A stretch of 64,000 nucleotides of DNA from Glycera tridactyla (taxonomy: Eukaryota). Location of the stretch: contig OZ286459.1 of NCBI GenBank assembly GCA_965644265.1, positions 108,810,001 to 108,874,000 on the forward strand, in the 5' to 3' direction. The translations under genes were made by a program, and so were the position numbers. Under the pieces are notes generated by a model. It made no database searches and was not told where the DNA came from. It worked only from the letters and a program-made list of their open reading frames with translations. Every line of letters starts with the position of its first letter. Position 1 is the stretch's first letter. Shown here piece after piece: positions 6,701 through 55,400 of this stretch.

Positions 6701-6834
6701 CTGCTCATTGAGGTTGGAGACGAGAAGCACTGGTCCAGTGGCGGGTTGTCCTGGCATGCGCATGCCCGCGGCACCGAGAGCTTGTATGTGCTGTGCTGGC
6801 AGTCCAAGGCCAAATGGTGATGCCGCCGCTGCTG
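6701..6834 (-). CDS. PTBP1: PTB coding exon, end of linker and RRM3 beta1 (134 nt, phase 1-0): AAAASPFGLGLPAQHIQALGAAGMRMPGQPATGPVLLVSNLNEQ
   Basis: Acceptor atgttcag|CAG, donor CAG|gtagga. VLLVSNLN is the PTB RRM3 start. Confidence 0.95.
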
Positions 6835-8651
6835 CTGAACATATCAAGAACAATCAGTCAAAATCAAAATCACCCTGGTAAATTCGAAATAATGAAACAT
6901 TCATTCAATTCCAACACTGTTAAACGCAAGTCATGCGGACACATTATCCGTAATCCAGTGCGATATCACAAAAATTTCCCTCATATAGTCTCCAATGCAT
7001 CTGATTCCAGCTGATTCCGAATTTTAATTCTTGCATGAAAATGAGCATCAGAAATGCAGTGATGCAAGTGCATAAAAACTAAATTTCCTGAAACCTGACC
7101 TAATTCCCTGAAACGACACCCCTATACTTGGATTTTGAATTTCGTGACTAATTTCCTGAATTCAGGAAATTTCCTGAAAATTGGAAATGGAAGCCTGATT
7201 TATGAAATTTTGGCTACCATATATGAACCAATATGGAGCACTTATGAAGTTGGAGACATTACATGTGGTAAGGCGATGGTTTCGTGTAAATTTATTGTGA
7301 GCAAGCATGATCCCAGCTGGATCAAACACAGATGCTTCATCAAACATCGAAGCTGGAAATTCTACTGAAAACAGGTGCAAGTACTGCTTTCACATGCATC
7401 CATTACAAGTTGCATCTGAAATATCTGCCCTGGCTAGTTGCATCACTGCAAATATGGTGAACTTTGATGTACCATTCATAATATCGCTCTTCTAAAGCTC
7501 AATAGAAGTAGTAGCTGCGATCAATGTCGAGTGAAAAAGTGGAAATTTTTGGAAGTAGTGAAATGCATATACGACATAGATTTGGTCATCCAGATACACC
7601 CAGGCAACACTGTGGATGGTATTTTGAGAATAGATCTGGCTGCACATGCAAACTAAGTCACTCCTGAATGAGAAAACTTCTCAGCCTATGACTGGTCAGC
7701 ACCGACGAACCTATTTAAATCACGACATCAACCAATAAATTATTACATGTATGCAATGAGACCAACGAGTGAGACCAATCGACATGTAGAAAATCACACC
7801 TAGCTTTGAGAAAATGGAGGAACGCTAAGTTACTCTAGTGTCAAAGACTGATCCTGGACATAAATTATGGTACTGCATCAAACTTGATGTAACTCGCCAA
7901 ACAAAATGTGTCAAGGTAGTCAAAAATTGGCCTGGGATGAGTCTGTTTGTAGCATAAAACAGACCACTTTGATCAAGCATATACCCCAATAATGCCAAAA
8001 TCAATATTTGAGGACTTTAGTATGGGAGAATTAAGAAGTCATTGGGAACAACAAAAACTGACAAAGGCTCAGAGATATCACTTGCAAAAATTATGAGAAT
8101 GAAAGTTTTGACTGATGATTCTCATTGCCATGTGCTCTGTGTGAGTCATAAAATTCTCTAAAGCAGCATGATAACCAATAGTGTGAAAAATGTTCAAATG
8201 TTTTGAATAATTGAAAAATCTAAAGATGATGGATTGATCTGAGTGTGGATTTTGGTATCCAAGACACCAGACAGAGTTGAAGTTGGATGCGAAAGCTAAT
8301 CATTTCATCAAGATGAATAAAAAACCAAGATGAGATCCGGAGTCGTAGAAAATACCTGAACTGGGATGTCAACCACTGATCATCAAAATGTGATTATTTC
8401 AATTTCAGAAAATCTAATGATATGAAATAGTTTTGGGGCAAAATGGACTGTTGTGAATATTATGATATACAATCGAATAATCACCAAACTTATCATATCG
8501 ATAACCTGACAAATATGTGAGAATAGATCCTATGTTATAAAGAGACAAGTTGAGAACCGAGAAGAGACCATCGATAGAACAGATTGAAGAGAGACAGAGG
8601 AACCAAGAAGTAGTTCATGCAACACACGATGGACGGAATTAGTAATCTTAC

Positions 8652-8678
8652 CTTGCAAACCTAGATGAGGTTGACCAG
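8652..8678 (-). CDS. PTBP1: 27-nt microexon (phase 1-1): (A)GQPHLGLQ
   Basis: Long tract ttctcttctgttttttcttttcattcactccag|CTGGTCAACCTCATCTAGGTTTGCAAG|gtaaga. Stop-free in the PTB frame. Confidence 0.75.
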
Positions 8679-8944
8679 CTGGAGTGAATGAAAAGAAAAA
8701 ACAGAAGAGAACCCCATTTTATACATCACCACTGTCAGCGGGGACAACACATACAATCAGTACATCGACACCGAATACACAAATATGGAAATCGAAATCT
8801 AATATTAGATTGGGCAAACCATGTGTGTCAAGCAGCACTTTTTCTCCTAGTTAGGATTTTTCAACAATCAATTAACGACATGGGATTCTGGGGCATGGGG
8901 GTTCTTTATGAGTGAGCAAATTATGCTGGAAATGAAATTCTTAC

Positions 8945-8986
8945 CTTTGTTCATGACCGGTTCCGGTCGATCCATGACTTACTGAA
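8945..8986 (-). other. Candidate regulated exon with one donor and three acceptors: 42 nt (in-frame TAA), 37 nt (frameshift) or 33 nt (in frame, MDRPEPVMNK)
   Basis: Pyrimidine tract ctgtccatcctccctttcccccAAG-ttCAG-tAAG and strong donor AAG|gtaaga at 8944. Confidence 0.6.
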
Positions 8987-10173
8987 CTTGGGGGAAAGGG
9001 AGGATGGACAGTAAGAACTAACTAAATAAATGTAATATGTGGATGGTGAATGAACTAGCTAAGTACGGATGACAGTGTATACAGATCACAAGGCCACATT
9101 TAGCAAATGTCCAGTAGCCCCTGTTTTATTTTTTTATTTTTCCAGTAGCTGTTTCACAAAAGCATAAGTGCCCTAACACTGATGTAATCAGTTGATAGCA
9201 GTTATCAACTGTTAGCAACAATTTTGAACACTCAAACTTCACTGAAATGGGGCTCCGTGGACATCCCGGCAGCATTAGTGACAGTAGCCATAGCCACAAC
9301 AACCACAATATAACGAGAAACATGCTGTAAATACACATTGCAGGAAAAATCCAGCGATACAATGCCAAAATTTATAATTCCCACAATTATTCACATATGC
9401 TCTTTGTAAGCCTCTGTAAATATTTGAGGAAACAAAATTAACTTTGAACTTCTAAACAAATCATAACACAGACACCAATATTTTTTGCAGACTACCCACC
9501 TGACCTTCAAACAAGTCACAGAAAAATCTTTCATATTATTTATTTTTCAACTTTTATTGGAGGGGGGGGGGGGGGGGGGGCATATATTTTGATGAGCATT
9601 TGCTGATAGTCATAGCTGGATCATATAAGATATCACAGTCAAATGCAAAGCAATGACAATACTGACTTCGGTGATAAACTATTATCACTGCTCATTGAAA
9701 TTGCTGCAATGTTATTCTAAGCCCAAATAAGTTTCACCAGACTATATGATCTCTGCAGTAAGATAATCATTTCCATTTGCACCAGCAAGCTTTCAAAATC
9801 TGGTGCTTGGTTCAATGACAGTTTCATGAATGGTCTTCATTCCAGGAATGATATTCACTGTTGAGACAGCACTCATGAATTTGATTCATGAAATATGCAC
9901 AAAGAGATCCAAATGACAGTCAATCTTCTATAGAGTCATCCAGAGCAGAAACATATAAGTGCGTAATAACAAATATCAGGTACAGGGAACCAACTCCTCA
10001 TCCTATTGTTACCAATCTGTCAGACCTAGACTATTAGAAATAAATTTTGAGAGCTACTCCAATGAGATATAAGTCATATCGATTACTAGAGTAACACTCA
10101 TTTTTGCACATCACACTGATGAAATGTCGCATACAGAAAACACTTTGGGGACTGATTATGGTAACAAACATAC

Positions 10174-10820: not shown

Positions 10821-10901
10821 CTCCTAATCCTGGCCCGTACGCTGTTAGTTGAGATCCAAAACCCGGCATTGCAAACGGTGACGCCAGCACACCGGGGGCA
10901 C
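10821..10901 (-). CDS. PTBP1: Linker cassette exon (81 nt, phase 1-1): (S)APGVLASPFAMPGFGSQLTAYGPGLG, homologous to vertebrate PTBP1 exon 9
   Basis: Acceptor gtgaag|GTGCCCCCGGT, donor GAG|gtacgc. Stop-free and frame-preserving. The peptide resembles GAPGIISASPYAGAGF (recalled). Branch-like AACTGAC lies about 25 nt upstream. Confidence 0.85.
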
Positions 10902-12819: not shown

Positions 12820-15819
12820 CATAGATGCATACAACTACTATAGACTATGTGATCTGACGCATCCTGGGTGATATTTGCACTATATCAAACACTGGGATGC
12901 CTCTACCAGCCTGGAATGCCTCCAATCCAGTCACTCCTGCGAGCAGATACCTAACAAATGATGAAACTTGCATAGCAATCAAACTGGGAGTCAAAGCATC
13001 ATCATTGTTCCAAGTCTAAGAATTCTGGTTGAGTTTGTATTAATTGACGGAATGAGATTTTCCCATATATATAAAATTGTGATTTTGTATGCCAACAAGT
13101 CACCGGACTGCGGCTGATTTAAAATGAGAATTAATATCATAGTGACTCTGAGACACATATATATCTGGGTTGTGCAACCAACAGTTTAGGTGCAACGCTC
13201 CATGAGCTGAGTGAAATGACTTGGTGTAGCCACAGATCAGTTTCTTGGTTAAGTTCAGACTTCAACTTGAACACGTGAATATTGTCGGATAATGAAAAAT
13301 TATCGCCATATTGCGATATGTAACCACTCATGAAAGCTTCATGAGGTCAAAGGTATCAAACATTGCCAAATTTTTTAGGCCAGAATGGTCGAATTACTAG
13401 ATTCTTTCAAATGCTGAAGATCTAATTATAAGCACCCCCACTCTCTACCATGCTCTGCAAAAAGAATAAGTTAAAGGATAACTTTCTAATCCTGTGTCAA
13501 CTAATAACAATAACGGGTGAACTGGCAGGAGATCATGAAGGAAAGGGGCTCCAGGTCAGAGCAGCAAAGAAGCAGGAATCATACAACAGGTAGGGGCAAA
13601 TACACCACAATCTGTGGCACCAAGCTGCTATTGATTTGGTTGCAATGACTGCATAAGGACTGAAATGGATACAATTTGTGGTTGAAAAATTACCCGTGAA
13701 GCTGCGGGATGTTTTTTTTGGCTCCGAGGTTAGCATGAGCCATAAGCCTGATCATTGCTAAAATTATCATCATTAGGCTGGAGAAGTTCATTAATTTTAG
13801 CTGAATTGGCCCAGAGATTTTTTGACTCACACACTCATAACTTAGACGGACATCAGAAACCCCTGCTTGAATCATGATTTTAGAAATGGAGAAGTCCAAA
13901 ATCATGCTTCAGTCACAGATATTGGATGTCTGAAAGAAACGAAATGCTCTCTCAATCAAATCAAGGAAAAGCAGAGTTTTGCTGTGAATTTGGCAATACT
14001 TTAGCCAAATTTGCTGAGGGGTACAAACTTGAAAAGCAGGGAATAGCTTTTCTTGTCCCTGATATCAAAATGAATTGAATATAATGCCGAATATTTAGAT
14101 ATATCCGAATGTCAAAAAAAAAATTCACACATAGAGAATAATATCAGACTAAGAATGAACAAGGGCTGTAAAAACAATTTGATTTGAGTATGATAATGAA
14201 TATGCAGCTGGTCACCACATGGGATGTGCTCCAAGGAGATAAATAAAATGAATACCTGATAGAAGAGCACCAGCAGTCGTAGATGTGAGAGTTAGAAGTA
14301 GGAGGAGGAGGTGGAGGAGGAGATGGACAGGGAGAAATAAGATGGAAAACGAGGACAGCACGAGACTTATATGGGACACAAACATCCAAGATCATCTTCA
14401 TTGCCATTGCAGTGCTGCTTGCTCTAGGCTCGGACTACTTTTTTTTCCAGTCTCGGCTGGCTCTCAAATCATACATGTTACATGCACAATGACAAGTAAA
14501 AATCTCACTAGTCAAATTCAAACCAAGCACATCGGGCATCATGACTAATCTCGTCTCAGATGAAGTTTATGATCATTTCATGATATATTCAGCTTCCGGA
14601 GGACAGGCTGATTCTATACGCATTGACAATGAGGTCACTTGACAACGGACCGAACTGTTTTAAGAAGCCATATGCTGATGAAAAGATTGCTGAAAGCTCC
14701 GACTTTCTAAAGCCACCGTGCATAACATGGGTCCTATTATCTTCATAATTTGCACTGAATGTGTTGTTGCACGAGCACATCTGTCCCCTCGATTCTCATG
14801 CAGAAGTCAGAAGAAATAGTGAACGACAGCTGACCATTCCAAAACATAATCAATAATAGTACTGGTTAAAGACGAGAGATGTAATTGAAAACCAGACAGA
14901 GATGAATGAAATAGAAGGCTGTAGGAGAAAAAGAGTCTGCCAATACATCCACAACTTCATAATCAACAGCGATAGTGGGCTTAAAATCATCAAATCACTT
15001 CATTGGAGAGGGGGAATCATTACACTTTCATCTCAAGTTCAGGAAGTTCACTATTCACCAGACACGCATCAAAGTCATTGGTTGGCTGAGAATATGTTTT
15101 TTCTTGAGTTGACCACCGGGTACTCAACTTGTAGAACACAAGTCCTATCCAAGCATAAATTGATACTTGGTAAACCGTCTCCATGTTTACTGGGTAACAT
15201 GAACTTAGTGACCTGGAGGTGAAAGTGCAATTTGAGGTAAAGCTTTCACCTTGGGAAGATGAAACAATCTCCACCATACCAAATACAGGGGTTGGTTCGT
15301 TCCCAGGATTGATGTTGCAGTAATTGGCTTTGAATAACTTATTCCAATCCTCAATTTTGAAACATAATCACAAGGCACAAAGGTTGCCAGCTATCTTGCC
15401 GAAAAGGGCAAAGGGAAACCAATATGTACTTGCCTGATTGATTGAGGAGTTGGAGTTTGATGGCATGTATCAACCCTAAGGTTTATATATGCTGGTATTT
15501 GCCCGACTAGCAAATTTGCAACACAGAATATCCAAAAAATTCAATTACTTTGTGGACAAGTGTGCATTGAAATCAACTTCATTTTACATCAATTTTATCT
15601 TTCCCAGGCAATAAGGCACCCCAACATCAAACCTAGGTTACCCAGAGGCTGGAATTTCCTGTGTTTATTCCACCATTCAAGCTACATCAGTGGCACAAAG
15701 GATGAGATGAACATGGTAAACTCCAGCCATGGCAAACAGAGCGATCCAACCCAAGAGTAACACTGATACCCACTCTCAATAAGAGGGCTGGGGGGAAAAA
15801 CAATACGAAAAGGACTTAC

Positions 15820-15994
15820 TTCCGAAACCTAATGCAGATACTTCACCGGGCAGAGCACCATCTCCAGAAGGCAGGCTAGGGTTTGTGTAGTCACGACTCT
15901 TGTCATTGTTGTATTTGACATTGAGGGTGGTCAACTTGGAAAAGTCTATGCGGAGTGTACAGCAGCCATTGTAGATGTTCTGACCATTGAGTGA
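15820..15994 (-). CDS. PTBP1: PTB coding exon, end of RRM2 (175 nt, phase 0-1): [58 protein letters not shown]
   Basis: Acceptor ttttttattttcag|TCA, donor GAA|gtaagt. Near-invariant PTB motif [37 protein letters not shown]. Confidence 0.97.
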
Positions 15995-19958: not shown

Positions 19959-21526
19959 TATCTTCTATGAGAGGCTGTCAATATTTTGTTCATATGAATA
20001 GCTCATATATGAATAGCCGATGCTCTCAATAAAATTTAATGAATGCTGCATACACAGAAAAATTTGATGGCAGTACCTAGAAAAATTAGAATGCAGTTCA
20101 TTAGTAACCAGCCAAATTATTCTCTCCTAGTTCTGGCGAGTCTCAGGGTATGCCATTAGCTCTCACTTCTTGTCAAATGAGCAAGTGCATAAAATGCATA
20201 TATGCACCACTTAATTTAACATTAGCTCTGCACTCTTGGCGGTGCTTTATAGCAGAGGCACCTGCTACCTACCCATCAATTAAAGGCCTCCACTGATGAT
20301 TCTGTACCATCTGTCATCAAATTCTGCTCCTTCCCTGACATGTTTTAGTCTCAGAGCACACAGCATGGTTGTGTAGGTTGAGGTAAAAAGTTACATTTAA
20401 TAAAGTTTGATAACAGGTTTCTCATTAAGGTGACATAATGTCTCGTGTTGAATTTCCGCGACTTCAATCATATACGTGTCACGCTCCTAATTAATAGTTT
20501 GTGCACACAATCTCCCTCGCTCACGTGCACACAAAAACACAAATGCACACGCACATGCATACATACATACACACACACACACCACAAAATACATGGACAT
20601 AAAAAAACACTAATATAATGAATAAAGGTAACTATCTAAACTAAATATTAATAAGAAACATCAATTCTCAACAGCTTCATGCAGGAAAGGCAGCTGAACA
20701 TCATTGGATTGATTGATTGATTGACAGATCAATCAATTGATAAGAATTTATCGGGATATACTAAGCCAAAGGATTATGTATGCTGTTTGTTCTCAATCAA
20801 TTAAAACTGAATGCTCCACACAATGCAGGCATTTCACACAAAAATCCTGCAGCCCAGATGATGGTGGTGGTCCAAGTGTTAAGATGGCATATGATTTTTT
20901 ATGGACGCATTACGCTGAGGATCAAATGGTGAGCACCATCTGGTGACGGCTCCCTGACCACTAATCTGTGACCTCCTGCTAATCTCATCAAAGAACCTCC
21001 GAGATTTTCTTTGCTCACTATTTCCGGCGATTATCACCTGATGACGGCGATTTTCATCTGATGAAGAGGGCCAAAAGATAATACATCCTGCTATCTCATA
21101 TAGCAAGAATCCACGTGTGTATTCAGAGAAATGACGCATGCATATTCAGAGAAATGAGGAGATTCCAGCTGATGCATCCGGTCATGAAGTGTTTTTCTGG
21201 TCTGAAAGTTGAACTTTTCCTAAGCATGACTTGTATTAAAATGTGACTGTATATTATGATTTTCATGGATGTGGTTGGCTTACAACCAAAACCCCTGAAA
21301 ACATGCAGGAATTTATTTTAGAACCATCTTCTGGATACTATGATACAAAGCACGGGCCTTTTCAATCACCTGCATCTTCTGTGCCCTATCTTCATTGATT
21401 CTAAACTGACCTTCATGATCTAAATGCCAAAACCGGCAGTATTACAAGTTCTTCTCAGCCATCATATATGGATATCTGCATTCACCATTGTGACAACTAA
21501 GGAAAGCCAGAAAACAAGATACTTAC

Positions 21527-34782: not shown

Positions 34783-37700
34783 AGAGAGATTTGAATCTGT
34801 TCCTCAGATTACCATTCGGTTCTAACTTATGGATCTAGTGTTGGTGCCAACTGCAGAAATAGCATTTTACAACCATGACATGCTGAGAAGTTTGTGGCCA
34901 TATGATCAAAGCAATGAGCACTGCACTCAGGTGGGACAGGAAAGGGAGTGAAAATTTATCCTTTTTGGAAACAGTGTTACATATTGGGCAGCATATACAC
35001 TGACAAATAATCATTTTCAAAGAAAACTACAGGAAATGCAATGATAGGATTTGTATGATTAAACAGGCAGAATCTAGTGCTTCAGAAGTCGCATCACAAT
35101 ACACATGATGTGTAAAGTATGGAACCGGAGTTGTTATCATGCAGGTATCATTAAATTCTTGTGAAACTTTTTTGATTCTCTTTTTGATGATGAAGGAAAG
35201 CAATTTAAATGTGAGCGGGTCGAGCCTGTGGACAGAGTAAAGGTTGTGGCTGGATGCATCAAGGAGATGACAGTACAGTGCATGTACACAGTTTCTGCAC
35301 ACGCAACCAACCAAATGCTCACAATCTGCCACCCACTCAATACACAGAACACCTTCATTTAGATTTCACTACTTCTAATGCATGCCCTTGATGCTGGCAC
35401 ATTTTTTTCTTTGGATTCAAGTAAACTAAAAAGCTGATGGATCCAGCTGAGCCCTGTCAGAATGGGCAAAAATACGCAGAAAAACATCACTAGCAAAAAG
35501 CAGCCTTGGAATTGTAAACCAGAAGACTTATGACACCTCTGTATATATTTCCACTGACCAGAGCAGAGTTATGACCAGGTTAGAAGGTGAAAACTTGGAA
35601 TTGAGGAGTAATATCACAAGTTTTAATACTCTTCCCAATCTGTTTCTTAACATCACTTGCTATACCTGCAGTGGCTGATACAGGGCACAGCTTGCAACAG
35701 CTGGCCTAATGAGAAGCTGCAGTGTAGCACAATTTCTAAAGTTCAGGTAAGGACAAGGACTCATTCACAACAGGGGAGGTGTAATTGAATTAGAGGAGAC
35801 ACACTTGCAAAACCATGTAAACTGACAGCATGTGTATCATTTTCAAGCACATTCATGTCTCAAATGAAACAGGCCCGTGTATAGCAGTCCATGTGTGGGA
35901 TGAGAAACTAATGAGAATTTGATGAGTTAATTCACATGAGATGGTTCCCCTTGACACCTCACTACAGAGACTAACTGAAAAATCTCAAAATCCTGACATT
36001 GCAGGTTCCTTGAGTAGCCTGTCAAGCCAATCTATTGATTGAATAATGCCTGCTAATCCATTATATAAGACAGCCATGCTGAACAACTGAAGATAAGGGG
36101 CTGGACAACTGATGGGAATATTGACCACCCCGTTCCAAATACTGAACCCTCAAGGCGGAGCAGAGAATGGGAAGGCGTTACAAGAGTATGTTGTAGGGTA
36201 GTTCTAATACCAAGTCAGAAAAGATGCAGAAAATCAAATATCCGAAGACAAGACACGACAGAAAATTCCAAAATGAGCACCTTCATGTCGAAAATTGCGA
36301 TTCATGAACCCACCTCCCATACAACTTGGGGTTCTACAAGTATCATAATCACCACCTTCTTGTGTGGGGTTTCCTCAGGAGTTGTGACTCCATAAAGTTT
36401 GTTACTCCCTGCCATTCTCAAATTCCTATCTTTATGTATTTTGCCACCAGGAAATGTCTACTCATTCCTCATTCACTCTCTACCTCAACTTGAATTTGTT
36501 TTGCAGTATTTGAGCAAACACAAACAATTTGAATGCTGAGCCTACACAGAATAACTCACCCAGAGTGGGTGATAACAACAGGTACAAGAGCAGGGTGGTA
36601 GCGAATGGTATACTCTCCACCACGTCAGATAAAATTAGTCAGTCAAGCCTTGGCTTGAAACTCAACTATACAAATTTTGATGTTTTAGTTGTACTTATCT
36701 TGTAAAATCTTGATTCATATTCATAGATATAGAATGGCAGGAATACTGATTTTCATCTTCTCTCATTAATGTAGTATAGGGAATCCTGTATTCAGAACTT
36801 TTTCTGAGAACAATATGTCTTGATCTGACTAGATAGCAATTCCTTCAAAATGATTCACTGATATGTATCCAAGAGACAAGACCTGATGCCCAAGAGATAA
36901 ATAAACAGATAGAAGTTTGGCCATGATGATGATGATGGGACAATGCTGACCTCAAGCAAATGGGTCACCATCCACAATTGCCTAAGAAATCAGATGTGAA
37001 AGTGTGAAGGTGGATCAAAGATGGCCTTGGAAGAAGTTGCCGGTGGTGGAGTTGCTTATCGAAGACTGGCCTTTAGAGTAATCTTACAATACCCAGCTGG
37101 CATCCTAGAGCCCTCAGATAACAAGAGATAAATGTTCATCCCCGACACGACCAACACACACTCTCAGCAACACTTCAACCCCCTTCAATTCCACACCACA
37201 CACCTAATGGTTAACAATGAACACTCAGCTCACAAGAGGTGGCTGTGAATCAAACTTGACATTGAAACCAGCTAATAGTAACAAATGGAAGAGGTACATT
37301 CCCAAATCTGAGGAGCTATGTTGTGCCTCATAATAGCACCTCTGTTAACTGGCACCACATTAGATATACAATTTTTTTCCTCACCAAGATAAAACAGTTT
37401 ATATCCTGTACTAATGTGAAAACAGGAAAGCCGGTATATATCATATGAGTGGGGGCTCTATCCGACCCTATCAAACATAAATTTGGTTTTTCATATCTGT
37501 CAACATATCCCTGCCTTACATTGCTGTCCTCATTCCACGCTTATCATGTTCACATCATGTTGGGGTGAGGAGGACAAATCTTTATGGGCACTGTACAATG
37601 ATAGTGCAACAAACTTATTCAAAACTGAGGACAATTGCTTGTGAATGTTACATGTTTTTCTTTGATCTCCACCACTGAAGTGGCATCTCTTGTACTTATC

Positions 37701-52423: not shown

Positions 52424-55400
52424 GGTAAGGCACAACATGCACCCACACACCCACACAACCACCCCCCCCCCCCCACACACACACAGTATCAAGGACAAGA
52501 ACAAGTGAATGGAATGGCAGACAAATATGAGTTATTGTGGGTGTTGAATGTGAGATGGTGGGTGGGCGGGTGGAGATCATGTCCTCAAGGCAACAGGTGG
52601 GCTTCCTTAGCTCATCATCCTCAGACATGCTATCACCAACCTTGCCCACTATCTACACCATCATTCAACCCTCCCCACTCACCACCATGCTTCTTCCACC
52701 CCATAAACTTACCCCACTCACCCATACCTCATGGATTCTCACTCTAACCATAAATATTCTTAAGTTCTCAACACAGAACATCAACTGTTCATAGCTTCAT
52801 CTCAGTAGAAATATTCTTGCTGGAGATCCTTCTTTCAAACAGAACTGGCAATATATACATGGGGAACACTCAGAGACCCAAAAAAATATCAGGTGTTCAA
52901 GCAAACAAGCATTATTTAGCACTAAGTTTTGTGGAGCTAATAAACCATTTTTTCTCAAGGCAAATTTGCCACTTTTCCAGGGCGAGTGTGTCATATATTT
53001 GTGCTTTCAAAATAGCAGCGTGCATAAAATATACTTGATGAACAGGCAAACCAAATTTGATGTGAGCTCCAAATATTTTCAAGGACAAATTGTGGGCCCA
53101 TCCAAGGTCCAGTAATTCGAGAGCACTCTAAATGGAGGCATTCTTGAAGTGAATGAAGTCAGGAATCTCAAGAAATTGGGATGTAAGTAGTGAGATGATA
53201 GACAAGAATGTATTCCATCTTGCAGTGACATCTGTTGAGCAAATTCATAAATATTCAATCAACAACTAGTTGTCTGATCATCATTTAGAGAGCTGTATGA
53301 TACAGTGCAACCTGTTTATACAAGCCGCCAATGGCGGCATGAAGTGGTCTTTGTAGATGGATTGCCAATGTAGAAAGGTGATATATGGATGTGGTTGTTT
53401 TCCGGGCAGAATACCTCATTTTGACAACTTCTTGGGACCCAAGAGACCTACCACTGAAAGCGCGGACTCAATCACAGTCTTTACTCAGCCTATGGTCTTG
53501 AACTCTTTAGAACTACATTTCCCAGACCAACTCTCACTCAGTTATACCTCCACAATTTTCCAAACCCACCACAGGAAAGACTATGTAATAAGATGATCCT
53601 ATGGTATGTAACATGTATATTGGCCTGGCATGGTTGGCTACAATGAAAGCAGGTATGAAATATGCTATCTGCAATACATCATGCAGGAATGTCTCCCACA
53701 GGAATACATTATTTATGAGTTCATCCTTCTCTGAATGGTCCTGATGGGGAGGGCACCTGGGACAATACACAGGGGAACCCATAAACTGGCCCCGCATAGG
53801 AATATGAGCAGCAAAACAGGTGAGCTAAGGGCATCAAATGTCATGATACAACCCACCAATGAATACATGGCATCTATGTTATGATCCCTGCCATTATAAC
53901 GATCCTAGTCCAGTGCATCAATTATCTCACATGCTATTTCCTAGATATTTTGGTGAAAGAAAATCCTGAAATTGGCAAGAAACAAAAGATCTTACTCAAC
54001 AGAAAGGGGTGCCTTTATTTGATTATATTGGCAGCCTGAGGATCAGAAATAGGTATCATCATTTCAAAATTTGGAGAAGGCCCACACTAGTTCTGAGCTG
54101 GATAACACTGTAGGATAATAGAATCTTCACCATGAAAATATGGGGAGGATCAGTCAAGAGACTTCATATGTTCTAACCTGGCTACATATAGAGAACAGAA
54201 TGAGAACATAGAGAGAAGAGATCATCATTATGGGGTCAGCTGAATTAGTCAGCATTTCTGCTCGTTCATCAGTGAAATAGCCAGCTTCCCGACATCACAT
54301 CGATGTAAAAAAAATCCACCGGGTTGTGATCAGCTAATGATCCAACCCTAGATGAACATCACATTACACTTGATGGTGAATTCCCTGGACAGCCATTATA
54401 ACTGCTAAATTCCCATAACCATTCAAAACCTCTACAAACACTCTGACAAAGAGTGCAGGAGTGGATATCAGTGTCTGATTATGACAACCACTTCGCATGG
54501 TGTAATGAATGCTTGAATGTTGCAATCATACGCTTCCAATCTCATCAAATTTAACTTGATTCTAATTGATTTTTCATTTCTCTCCCTAAAATCCAGGGAT
54601 ATGGAGGTGCTGAATGAAGTTTTGATCTCGCCAGGGCGCAGCTTCAAACATCGATTATCTAAATCAGCAACAGGTTTGACTTTTTATGAGCGAAACCGCA
54701 GATACATTTTCCAGAAATGATTTCTAGAGCAATGTTCCAGATGATGCAATTTGAGGTAAATCTTGGATTCAAAGATAGCGAGGTGAAAACTCATATCAAT
54801 TTGTGAAGCAACACTAACAAAGTTATAATGAAGAGAAAAGCCCATATTCAGTCAATAGTAGGAAGATTGCATCACTGAATATCTATCCATCTAGACAACC
54901 GAGCTGACAGACACTAGTCCGAATGTGAATCTGCTAAAAAATGATGGGAGAGTTGAAATCCAGCAGGCAAAAGCAAATGTATCCTAATGAATTGTGTATG
55001 GGAACGCTGAATAGATGGATGCATCTCAGGTTCAATCTATGTACGGATTACGGAATGACTCTAATACATACCTGATTTTGAGGGTAGTAATGAGGAACAT
55101 AGGGATAGTAAATATGCTCAGGATACTCCATGAGAACTGATATAAGTGGAAACGACTGACGTAGGATAAATCCGGGATATAATAGTAGAATAAAACCGGG
55201 ATGGAATCGTAGCTCTAGACCGTCACTACCTTGAAAGATGCACCCACAATTGTTGATGCCAGGAGGGCAAACTGTAAGATGGTCAGACAGAGATGGTGGT
55301 CAGTACATGGAGATGTATATGCACATATGTATGTATATATGCAGTTAGTGACCCAGATCCAGCTGTAAGAATGTCCCCAGGAGAAAGGTATGGCAATGAG

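What the first reader, a model, noticed from the sequence alone, without database searches (positions are those of the whole stretch)
8945..9030. One donor, three acceptors: a stop, frameshift or in-frame switch exon containing a hairpin
Seen: AGs spaced 5 and 4 nt apart. The 42-nt form reads xTT CAG TAA (stop). The 37-nt form, which uses the best-looking CAG, shifts frame to a TGA at 6707-6705. The 33-nt form is in frame (MDRPEPVMNK). The body can fold as UCAU-[GGAUC]-GACCG(GAAC)CGGUC-AUGA. A GTAAGT donor also overlaps the second acceptor, which would allow a 4-nt exon TTCA. Established: splicing factors, including PTBP1/2, are controlled by AS-NMD. Inference: this is an inclusion-type poison exon, mechanistically different from the vertebrate exon-11 skipping route.
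Basis: partly seen in the sequence, partly recalled or inferred. Interest (0 to 1): 0.72.

Follow-up and report, generated by a model that had tools for sequence, protein, structure and literature searches.

The report
Unconfirmed stop-carrying mini-exon in PTB gene
A 33-42-base stretch with unusually good splice signals sits in an intron of this animal's only PTB splicing-regulator gene and would mostly break the reading frame if spliced in, but the one RNA data set available shows it skipped, so it is a plausible yet unproven "poison exon".

Summary
On the minus strand, a 28-nt AG-free pyrimidine tract (9016-8989) leads to three AGs giving exon starts at 8986, 8981 and 8977. All share the donor AAG|GTAAGA after 8945.

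Spliced in silico, the 42-nt form reads ...GLGVQ*, the 37-nt form shifts frame to TGA 6707-6705, and the 33-nt form inserts VMDRPEPVMNK in frame.

The host is a single-copy PTBP gene. The candidate lies in the RRM2-RRM3 linker intron, between an 81-nt exon (10901-10821) and a 27-nt microexon (8678-8652).

Splice signals this strong are rare: 1 per 320 kb of control sequence, against 3 on the gene strand here, two of them real exons.

The only RNA run shows junctions 10821|6831 and 8652|6831. None touches the candidate, and a low-depth unspliced contig runs straight through it, so inclusion is at most a few percent.

- The hairpin is no better than shuffles.
- PTB and Rbfox motifs are nearly absent.
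- There is no conservation in four distant relatives, but the RNA-proven microexon also fails that test.

Best reading, at about 0.45: a lineage-specific, normally skipped cassette whose inclusion is unproductive. An inert pseudo-exon is nearly as likely. Mouse Ptbp1 already has an inclusion-type poison exon, by my inference from exon numbering in the equivalent intron.

The parts
8989..9016 (-). AG-free, C-rich polypyrimidine tract (uucuuacuguccauccucccuuuccccca). It holds a branch-point-like cuuAc with its A at 9012, 25 nt before the first AG.
   Evidence: Sequence read. 18 of the 20 bases before the first AG are pyrimidines, and 30 of 40. That is stronger than the tracts of the constitutively used 81-nt and RRM3-start exons, at 22-23 of 40.
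8978..8988 (-). Three candidate acceptor AGs: AAG 8989-8987, CAG 8984-8982 and AAG 8980-8978. They give exon starts at 8986, 8981 and 8977.
   Evidence: No junction to any of them appears in run X1.
8945..8986 (-). Candidate cassette exon in its 42-nt form. The nested 37-nt form starts at 8981 and the 33-nt form at 8977.
   Evidence: In-silico splicing. The 42-nt form gives ..GLGVQ* followed by VMDRPEPVMNK. The 37-nt form gives a frameshift. The 33-nt form gives an in-frame VMDRPEPVMNK. The sequence is single-copy in the 2.04-Gb genome.
8979..8981 (-). In-frame TAA of the 42-nt form. An in-frame ATG follows 3 nt later at 8975-8973, in a G(-3)/G(+4) context.
8977..8982 (-). Internal GTAAGT that shares its G with the second acceptor AG.
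   Evidence: The AG and the GT overlap by one base, so this is not an AG|GTAAGT recursive splice site.
8955..8968 (-). Five-base-pair hairpin GACCG(GAAC)CGGUC.
   Evidence: It is present in the MFE and centroid folds but is not better than shuffles (z -0.75 and +1.07). The two differences in the X1 contig, at 8960 and 8962, fall in the loop.
8939..8944 (-). Donor GTAAGA preceded by AAG. It matches 8 of 9 positions of the MAG|GTRAGT consensus.
   Evidence: No junction from 8945 appears in X1.
8652..8678 (-). Neighbouring 27-nt phase-1 microexon (A)GQPHLGLQ, 266 nt downstream of the candidate. It serves as the RNA-validated comparator.
   Evidence: Junction 8652|6831 with GT..AG ends, contig depth 16.4. 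It is surrounded by dense UCUU/CUCUCU motifs and has a UGCAUG at 8621.
10821..10901 (-). Upstream 81-nt phase-1 linker exon (S)APGVLASPFAMPGFGSQLTAYGPGLG.
   Evidence: Junction 10821|6831, contig depth 28.7. It is conserved in four relatives, with z between 5 and 37.
6701..6831 (-). RRM3-start exon (AAASPFGL...LLVSNLNEQ). It contains the TGA 6707-6705 reached by the 37-nt form.
   Evidence: A 4122-nt X1 contig starts here. The exon is homologous to Penaeus PTBP residues 369-421. The stop position was computed.
15820..15994 (-). End-of-RRM2 exon ([36 protein letters not shown]...ALGFG). It ends in phase 1 with donor GTAAGT at 15819.

Best explanation
The stretch is a lineage-specific cassette exon in the RRM2-RRM3 linker intron of the animal's single PTBP gene. 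It can be spliced but is normally skipped, and its inclusion is unproductive.

How it would work:
- The strong C-rich pyrimidine tract, the branch-point-like cuuAc and the AAG|GTAAGA donor define it as a microexon.
- The first AG after the branch point (AAG, 42-nt form) and the intrinsically better CAG 5 nt further on (37-nt form) should take most of the splicing. Both create a premature stop: the TAA inside the exon, or the TGA at 6707-6705.
- At least five exon junctions lie downstream of that stop, so the mRNA should go to nonsense-mediated decay.
- The in-frame 33-nt form uses the third, least favoured AG and should be minor.

What is shown and what is inferred:
- Shown: the anatomy, the reading-frame consequences, the rarity of such signals by chance, and the skipping in the one RNA run.
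- Inferred: that the exon is included at all, the preference among the acceptors, and the decay.

Whether inclusion is regulated, by PTB or by another factor, or is only splicing noise removed by NMD, is open. I put regulation at about one in five.
For: - Splice-signal strength. A tract with at least 18 of 20 pyrimidines, an AG, 20-60 nt and GTRAG occurs once per 320 kb of control strand. It occurs 3 times on the gene strand of the window, the other two being a real 52-nt RRM2 exon and the RNA-confirmed 27-nt microexon. It never occurs on the opposite strand.
- With the donor required to be AG|GTRAG, only the microexon and the candidate remain in the window, and the control set gives 0-1 hits.
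- Context. The linker is modular. X1 shows alternative use of the 27-nt microexon (junctions 10821|6831 and 8652|6831). Decapod PTBP isoform sets carry several small cassettes at the same place.
- All flanking exons are phase 1, so the frame consequences hold whichever neighbour is joined.
- The downstream 34-nt, RRM3 and RRM4 exons exist beyond the window start, so the stop is premature.
- Precedents: PTB family genes are controlled by AS-NMD (PMC1940037). Mouse Ptbp1 has an inclusion-type 56-nt poison exon in the linker region (10.1101/2024.09.09.612108). Unproductive splicing arises repeatedly and independently in RNA-binding-protein genes (PMC4379411).
Against: - There is no junction at 8945 or at 8986/8981/8977 in the only RNA run.
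- The two observed junction classes, at depths 28.7 and 16.4, account for the downstream exon's depth of 42.2.
- The only contig over the candidate (8890-9081, depth 2.3) is colinear with the genome.
- There is no detectable conservation in four orthologous introns. The test has no power here, because the RNA-proven microexon also fails it.
- The two differences between X1 and the assembly fall inside the 42 nt, with none in the 150 flanking nt. This shows no sign of constraint on the exon body.
- The GTAAGT sitting on the acceptors could bind U1 and silence the exon.
Confidence: 0.45

Rival explanations
1. The stretch is an inert pseudo-exon. A good pyrimidine tract and a good donor lie 33-42 nt apart by chance, or as a leftover. 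The spliceosome does not use the pair above noise, for example because the GTAAGT overlapping the acceptors, or exonic silencers, block exon definition. It has no function.
For: - X1 shows no junction at the candidate and only an unspliced contig over it.
- There is no conservation.
- Both polymorphisms fall inside the exon body.
- The hairpin is at chance level.
- There are no regulator motifs.
- Chance expectation over the whole 64-kb gene strand is not negligible, at about 0.2.
Against: Within the 4-kb intron the chance expectation is only about 0.01. Its signals are stronger than those of neighbouring exons that are used. Contigs cannot show the absence of a rare or degraded isoform (tool statement).
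Confidence: 0.35
2. The stretch is a tissue-specific coding microexon. The 33-nt form adds VMDRPEPVMNK to the RRM2-RRM3 linker as one more module, alongside the 81-nt and 27-nt cassettes. The two upstream AGs are bypassed in the tissue that uses it.
For: The 33-nt form is in frame and phase 1 like its neighbours. The linker is modular here and in arthropods. X1 is a single sample of unknown tissue.
Against: - It needs the third AG, 9 nt after the first, behind a CAG. By established knowledge of 3' splice-site choice this is the least favoured.
- Both X1 differences are non-synonymous in this frame (E>G, P>S). The one difference in the proven microexon is synonymous.
- No similar peptide occurs in 389 PTBP sequences.
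- The charged peptide is unlike the Gly/Ala/Pro-rich linker.
Confidence: 0.1
3. The stretch is a PTB-autoregulated homeostatic switch. PTB protein binds near the exon and drives its inclusion when PTB is high, giving negative feedback through NMD.
For: PTB family genes autoregulate through AS-NMD in vertebrates (PMC1940037). The exon sits in the PTB gene itself and behind a pyrimidine tract.
Against: - There is only one UCUU in the 100 nt upstream. No CUCUCU occurs near the candidate, and the downstream UCUU/UUCU motifs belong to the microexon's own tract.
- The tract is C-rich (CCUCCCUUUCCCCC). The neighbouring microexon, by contrast, is embedded in UCUU/CUCUCU.
- PTB binding to the exon's own pyrimidine tract would repress inclusion, which is positive feedback.
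- The 34-nt exon used for the vertebrate feedback is present here.
Confidence: 0.06
4. The stretch is a recursive-splicing or zero-length-exon site. The juxtaposed acceptor and GTAAGT would let the long intron be removed in two steps, with the 42-nt unit acting as an RS-exon.
For: A pyrimidine tract, an AG and a perfect GTAAGT lie within 10 nt, with a second donor downstream.
Against: - The AG and the GT share one base (cAGTaagt).
- The regenerated donor would remove the last G of the upstream exon, or leave TTCA, and either outcome shifts the frame.
- The intron is only 4-9 kb long.
Confidence: 0.02

Closest known systems
Mouse Ptbp1 poison exon 9N (56 nt, Rbfox-promoted; bioRxiv 10.1101/2024.09.09.612108)
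   Same: It is an inclusion-type, stop-introducing cassette in a PTB gene. It lies in the linker region upstream of the exon that starts RRM3; the position is inferred from the paper's exon numbering and PMC1940037.
   Different: Exon 9N is shown by RNA-seq and minigenes, is conserved among mammals, and depends on two downstream GCAUG motifs. The candidate here has no RNA support, no GCAUG within its flanks, no sequence similarity to 9N, and a different length.
PTBP1 exon 11 / PTBP2 exon 10 skipping coupled to NMD (PMC1940037)
   Same: It is the same gene family and has the same outcome: a frameshift, a premature stop and decay.
   Different: The vertebrate event is skipping of a constitutive 34-nt exon, repressed by PTB itself. 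Here a non-coding cassette would have to be included. The orthologous 34-nt exon (KVSPDALFTLFG) exists in this gene about 2.6 kb beyond the window start, so both routes are structurally possible.
Ultraconserved poison exons of SR-protein genes (SRSF3, TRA2B; PMC11791180, PMC4379411)
   Same: These are cassette exons with in-frame stops in splicing-regulator genes, kept at a low steady-state level.
   Different: Those exons are long, extremely conserved and bound by their own protein. This one is 33-42 nt and is not conserved in relatives whose synonymous sites are saturated. It also carries two polymorphisms in its body.
Tandem (NAGNAG-type) acceptors
   Same: Several AGs lie behind one pyrimidine tract and give alternative exon starts.
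   Different: NAGNAG sites are 3 nt apart and keep the frame. Here the spacings are 5 and 4 nt. A true CAGCAGCAG acceptor is present at the RRM3-start exon (6837-6829), where X1 uses the AG at 6833-6832.
Recursive splice sites and RS-exons
   Same: An acceptor abuts a consensus GTAAGT, and a second donor lies downstream.
   Different: The defining register AG|GTAAGT is off by one base, so recursion would not restore the reading frame.

Membership tests
Poison (AS-NMD) cassette exon | The exon is actually spliced into some transcripts. | tested here: inconclusive
   No junction at 8945 or at 8986/8981/8977 appears in the contigs of the only RNA run, and an unspliced contig lies over the candidate. 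Contigs without NMD inhibition cannot exclude a rare isoform.
Poison (AS-NMD) cassette exon | Inclusion creates a premature stop upstream of further exon junctions. | tested here: met
   The 42-nt form has a TAA at 8981-8979 and the 37-nt form reaches the TGA at 6707-6705. At least five exons lie downstream.
Poison (AS-NMD) cassette exon | The inclusion isoform rises when NMD or translation is blocked. | not testable with these tools
   It needs treated tissue or cells of this species.
Poison (AS-NMD) cassette exon | Sequence conservation beyond that of the surrounding intron (typical of the family, not obligatory). | tested here: not met
   The best local alignments to four orthologous introns stay within the range of shuffles. 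The 81-nt exon scores z 5-37, and the RNA-proven microexon also fails, so the test has low power.
PTB-autoregulated exon | Clusters of UCUU/CUCUCU PTB motifs flank the exon. | tested here: not met
   There is one UCUU in the 100 nt upstream and no CUCUCU near the candidate. The neighbouring microexon has 4 UCUU, 4 UCUCU and 1 CUCUCU downstream.
Rbfox-driven exon (as Ptbp1 exon 9N) | A (U)GCAUG lies in the downstream intron. | tested here: not met
   No GCATG occurs between 8986 and 8679. The nearest one, at 8621, lies downstream of the microexon.
NAGNAG tandem acceptor | Two AGs lie exactly 3 nt apart and preserve the frame. | tested here: not met
   The spacings are 5 and 4 nt.
Recursive splice site | The register AG|GTAAGT, so that the donor is regenerated exactly at the junction. 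| tested here: not met
   In cAGTaagt the AG and the GT share the G at 8982.
PTBP (polypyrimidine tract-binding protein) gene, as host | Four RRMs with PTB-type sequence in the usual order. | tested here: met
   Exons along 62.5 kb of the window, and continuing to about 7.5 kb beyond its start, match Penaeus PTBP residues 111-579 in order. Hits in the protein search are named PTBP1/2/3 and carry Pfam RRM_5, RRM_1 and RRM_8. The gene is single-copy by two exon searches of the genome.

The most novel reading that the evidence does not exclude
The exon is a three-way switch with a stop-restart option. In the 42-nt form, the TAA is followed 3 nt later by an in-frame AUG in a G(-3)/G(+4) context (GUAAGUCAUGG). 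Termination and re-initiation, or escape from NMD through downstream initiation, could then split PTB into an RRM1-2 half and an MDRPEPVMNK-RRM3-4 half. The 37-nt form would destroy the message, and the 33-nt form would lengthen the linker. The choice among acceptors 5 and 4 nt apart would set the ratio of the three outcomes.
Probability: 0.02. Interest if true: 0.75.

Novelty: new member of a known kind. Interest (0 to 1): 0.25.

Why it matters
If the exon is used, it would be an invertebrate PTB gene with an inclusion-type unproductive exon in the same linker intron where mouse Ptbp1 carries exon 9N. It would also keep the 34-nt exon of the vertebrate skipping route. That would be a case of repeated, independent invention of AS-NMD control in one splicing-regulator gene, in line with Lareau and Brenner (PMC4379411).

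As it stands, it is a well-formed candidate without expression evidence. It is worth a cheap RT-PCR or a look at raw reads, but not more.

Tried and rejected
- **RNA evidence.** An exon-only query would probably have listed more runs. Another note on this genome mentions four RNA runs.
- **Protein word searches.**
  - The RRM3-start exon ORF gave no hit in the allowed length range.
  - A search with a Penaeus full-length PTBP returned only arthropods, none closer to this species.
  - A search with the end-of-RRM2 exon gave genomic ORFs of distant relatives.
- **Walking along a 751-kb contig of a relative from RRM1.** This was abandoned. Its gene calls read through TGA and cannot be referenced. 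Searching that contig's genome is not possible.
- **Exact look-up of five ORFs around the candidate.** None is in the collection.
- **Metagenome scans.** The scan for the exon body gave nothing. The scan for the proven 81|RRM3 junction, run as a positive control, also gave nothing, so the first negative means nothing.
- **Peptide and DNA comparison with four orthologous introns.** Nothing scored above chance.
- **Rejected readings.**
  - A significant hairpin.
  - A 4-nt exon TTCA; no evidence for it, and such exons are implausible.
  - A recursive splice site; the register is off by one.
  - Repeat or transposon origin; the sequence is single-copy.

No contig looked human.

Full report
**What is there**

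The window carries most of a PTBP (polypyrimidine tract-binding protein) gene on the minus strand.
- RRM1 exons lie near 62.4 kb and 38.6 kb.
- RRM2 exons lie at 29.3, 23.4, 21.5 and 15.9 kb.
- The exon that starts RRM3 is at 6831-6701.
- The remaining exons lie beyond the window start. These are a 34-nt exon KVSPDALFTLFG about 2.6 kb out, then RRM3, then RRM4.
- Two exon searches of the 2.04-Gb genome found one copy only.

Between the end of RRM2 (exon 15994-15820) and the RRM3-start exon lie an 81-nt exon (10901-10821) and a 27-nt microexon (8678-8652). The candidate sits between these two.

On the minus strand a 28-nt AG-free pyrimidine tract (9016-8989) contains a branch-point-like cuuAc. 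Three AGs follow at 8988-87, 8983-82 and 8979-78. The exon body ends at G8945, followed by GTAAGA.

I spliced the three forms in silico between the flanking phase-1 exons.
- The 42-nt form gives ...GPGLGVQ* and then VMDRPEPVMNK.
- The 37-nt form shifts frame and stops at TGA 6707-6705.
- The 33-nt form inserts VMDRPEPVMNK in frame.

The GTAAGT at 8982-8977 and the palindrome GACCG-GAAC-CGGUC at 8968-8955 are also as described.

**More than chance?**

For the splice signals, yes. I required at least 18 pyrimidines in the 20 nt before an AG, then 20-60 nt, then GTRAG.
- The gene strand of the window has three hits: a real 52-nt RRM2 exon, the 27-nt microexon and the candidate. The opposite strand has none.
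- Sixteen 10-kb control stretches of the same chromosome, both strands, have one hit in 320,000 bases.
- That is about 0.2 expected per 64 kb, and about 0.01 in the 4-kb intron.
- The candidate's tract (30 of 40 pyrimidines) is stronger than those of the neighbouring used exons (22-23 of 40).

For the hairpin, no. The exon folds at -8.4 kcal/mol with z -0.75, and 42 of 200 shuffles fold as well. In 86 nt of context z is +1.07.

The stretch is single-copy, not a repeat.

**RNA**

Only one run could be found and laid. It is X1, consisting of assembled contigs that are 98.5-100% identical to the window in the exons. It is evidently RNA, since it holds spliced junctions.
- It shows junction 10821|6831 at contig depth 28.7 and junction 8652|6831 at depth 16.4. 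Both have GT..AG ends on the minus strand.
- Their sum, 45, matches the depth of the downstream exon, 42.2. A third class of junction into that exon can be a few percent at most.
- No junction touches 8945 or any of the three acceptors.
- The bin depths over 8800-9199 are fully accounted for by two low-depth contigs colinear with the genome: 8609-8838 at depth 2.2 and 8890-9081 at depth 2.3. These are unspliced RNA or a trace of DNA.
- The X1 contig differs from the assembly at 8960 and 8962. Both lie in the hairpin loop, and both are non-synonymous in the 33-nt frame. There is no difference in the 150 flanking bases.
- The one difference in the proven microexon (8656) is synonymous.

This weakens the coding reading and shows no constraint on the exon body, but the numbers are tiny. 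Contigs drop rare variants and no NMD inhibition was applied, so a degraded poison isoform is not excluded.

**Relatives**

No close relative could be reached. Four orthologous loci were obtained from genomic ORFs that contain the RRM2-end exon: L010, L011, L013 and L014. Their synonymous sites are saturated, with exon DNA identity of 75-80%.
- The 81-nt exon is found in all four, with local-alignment z between 5 and 37.
- The candidate and the RNA-proven 27-nt microexon both stay within the shuffle range.
- No comparable strong mini-exon appears in their linker introns.

The candidate is therefore not an ancient or ultraconserved element. The test says nothing about a lineage-specific exon.

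Among 389 PTBP sequences collected, including decapod isoform sets with several small linker cassettes, none carries a peptide like MDRPEPVMNK.

**Mechanism**

By established knowledge of 3' splice-site choice, the first AG after the branch point is preferred, and within a few nucleotides CAG beats AAG. The 42-nt and 37-nt forms should therefore dominate any inclusion, and both are unproductive. The stop lies at least five junctions before the end of the message. The in-frame form needs the third AG.

I therefore read the element as a normally skipped cassette whose inclusion sends the mRNA to NMD (confidence 0.45). An inert pseudo-exon is nearly as likely (0.35), perhaps silenced by U1 binding to the GTAAGT that sits on the acceptors.

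Direct PTB autoregulation is poorly supported.
- There is one UCUU upstream, no CUCUCU and no GCAUG. The microexon next door is embedded in such motifs and has a UGCAUG at 8621.
- PTB binding to the exon's own tract would repress a poison exon, which is positive feedback.

A recursive-splicing reading fails because the AG and the GT overlap by one base.

**Comparison with what is known**
- PTB exon 11 skipping and nPTB exon 10 skipping give NMD substrates (PMC1940037).
Mouse Ptbp1 has a 56-nt inclusion-type poison exon 9N, promoted by Rbfox through downstream GCAUG motifs. It lies between mouse exon 8 (human exon 9) and the next exon (10.1101/2024.09.09.612108). By inference from the exon numbering, that is the intron just before the RRM3-start exon, the same relative place as here.
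- The 34-nt exon is also present in this gene.
- Independent origins of unproductive splicing in RNA-binding-protein genes are well documented (PMC4379411).

If real, the candidate is a new member of a known kind.

**Verdict**

Interest is modest at 0.25. It would rise if junction reads appear under NMD inhibition.

Noticed in passing
window 6829-6837 (minus strand): The RRM3-start exon has a triple CAGCAGCAG acceptor. The X1 contigs use the AG at 6833-6832, so the exon starts at 6831. This is a true NAGNAG-type site that could add or drop an alanine.
   Followed up: partly
L005:7344-7377 (minus strand), about 2.6 kb beyond the window start: A 34-nt exon encoding KVSPDALFTLFG is the counterpart of vertebrate PTBP1 exon 11 / PTBP2 exon 10. 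tblastn hits at the same place in three relatives (L010, L011, L013) suggest it is present there too; their exon lengths were not checked. The vertebrate skip-and-decay route is therefore structurally available in this invertebrate.
   Followed up: partly
window 8652-8678 and flanks 8400-8780 (minus strand): The 27-nt microexon is confirmed by a spliced contig (8652|6831, depth 16.4, roughly a third of transcripts). It has a synonymous polymorphism at 8656, dense UCUU/CUCUCU downstream and a UGCAUG at 8621. This is the signature of a PTB/Rbfox-regulated exon, which the candidate lacks.
   Followed up: partly
window 7128-7184: A short repeat is covered at very high summed depth (about 700) by many X1 contigs that continue into unlike sequence. 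It is an expressed dispersed repeat inside the intron.
   Followed up: no
window 53931-53965, 37234-37271 and 21019-21057 (minus strand): Three further acceptor-donor pairs have 16 of 20 pyrimidines and GTGAG donors. At that stringency the background is about 3.4 per 64 kb, so they are at chance level.
   Followed up: partly
window 8609-9081 and about 9400-9599: All intronic contigs of X1 in the 4-kb intron fall within 1 kb around the two small cassettes, at depth about 2.2, and none falls elsewhere. This could be chance (roughly p 0.2) or slower splicing around the alternative exons.
   Followed up: no
L006 (ENA ERZ26052378, 751-kb contig) and similar loci: ENA 'metagenome' assemblies hold long animal contigs. 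In L006 the four gene calls checked read through TGA, so the products of such calls are artefacts and cannot be referenced.
   Followed up: partly
P0162-P0215 (decapod PTBP isoforms): The arthropod RRM2-RRM3 linker is built from several optional cassettes: about 30 aa GAPGVLASPF..., 5 aa VSSLS, 17 aa APNLNLPNRTGENATPT and 5 aa GMPFT. This parallels the modular linker seen here.
   Followed up: no
window about 9553-9572 (minus strand): A run of about 19 C lies in the intron upstream of the candidate.
   Followed up: no
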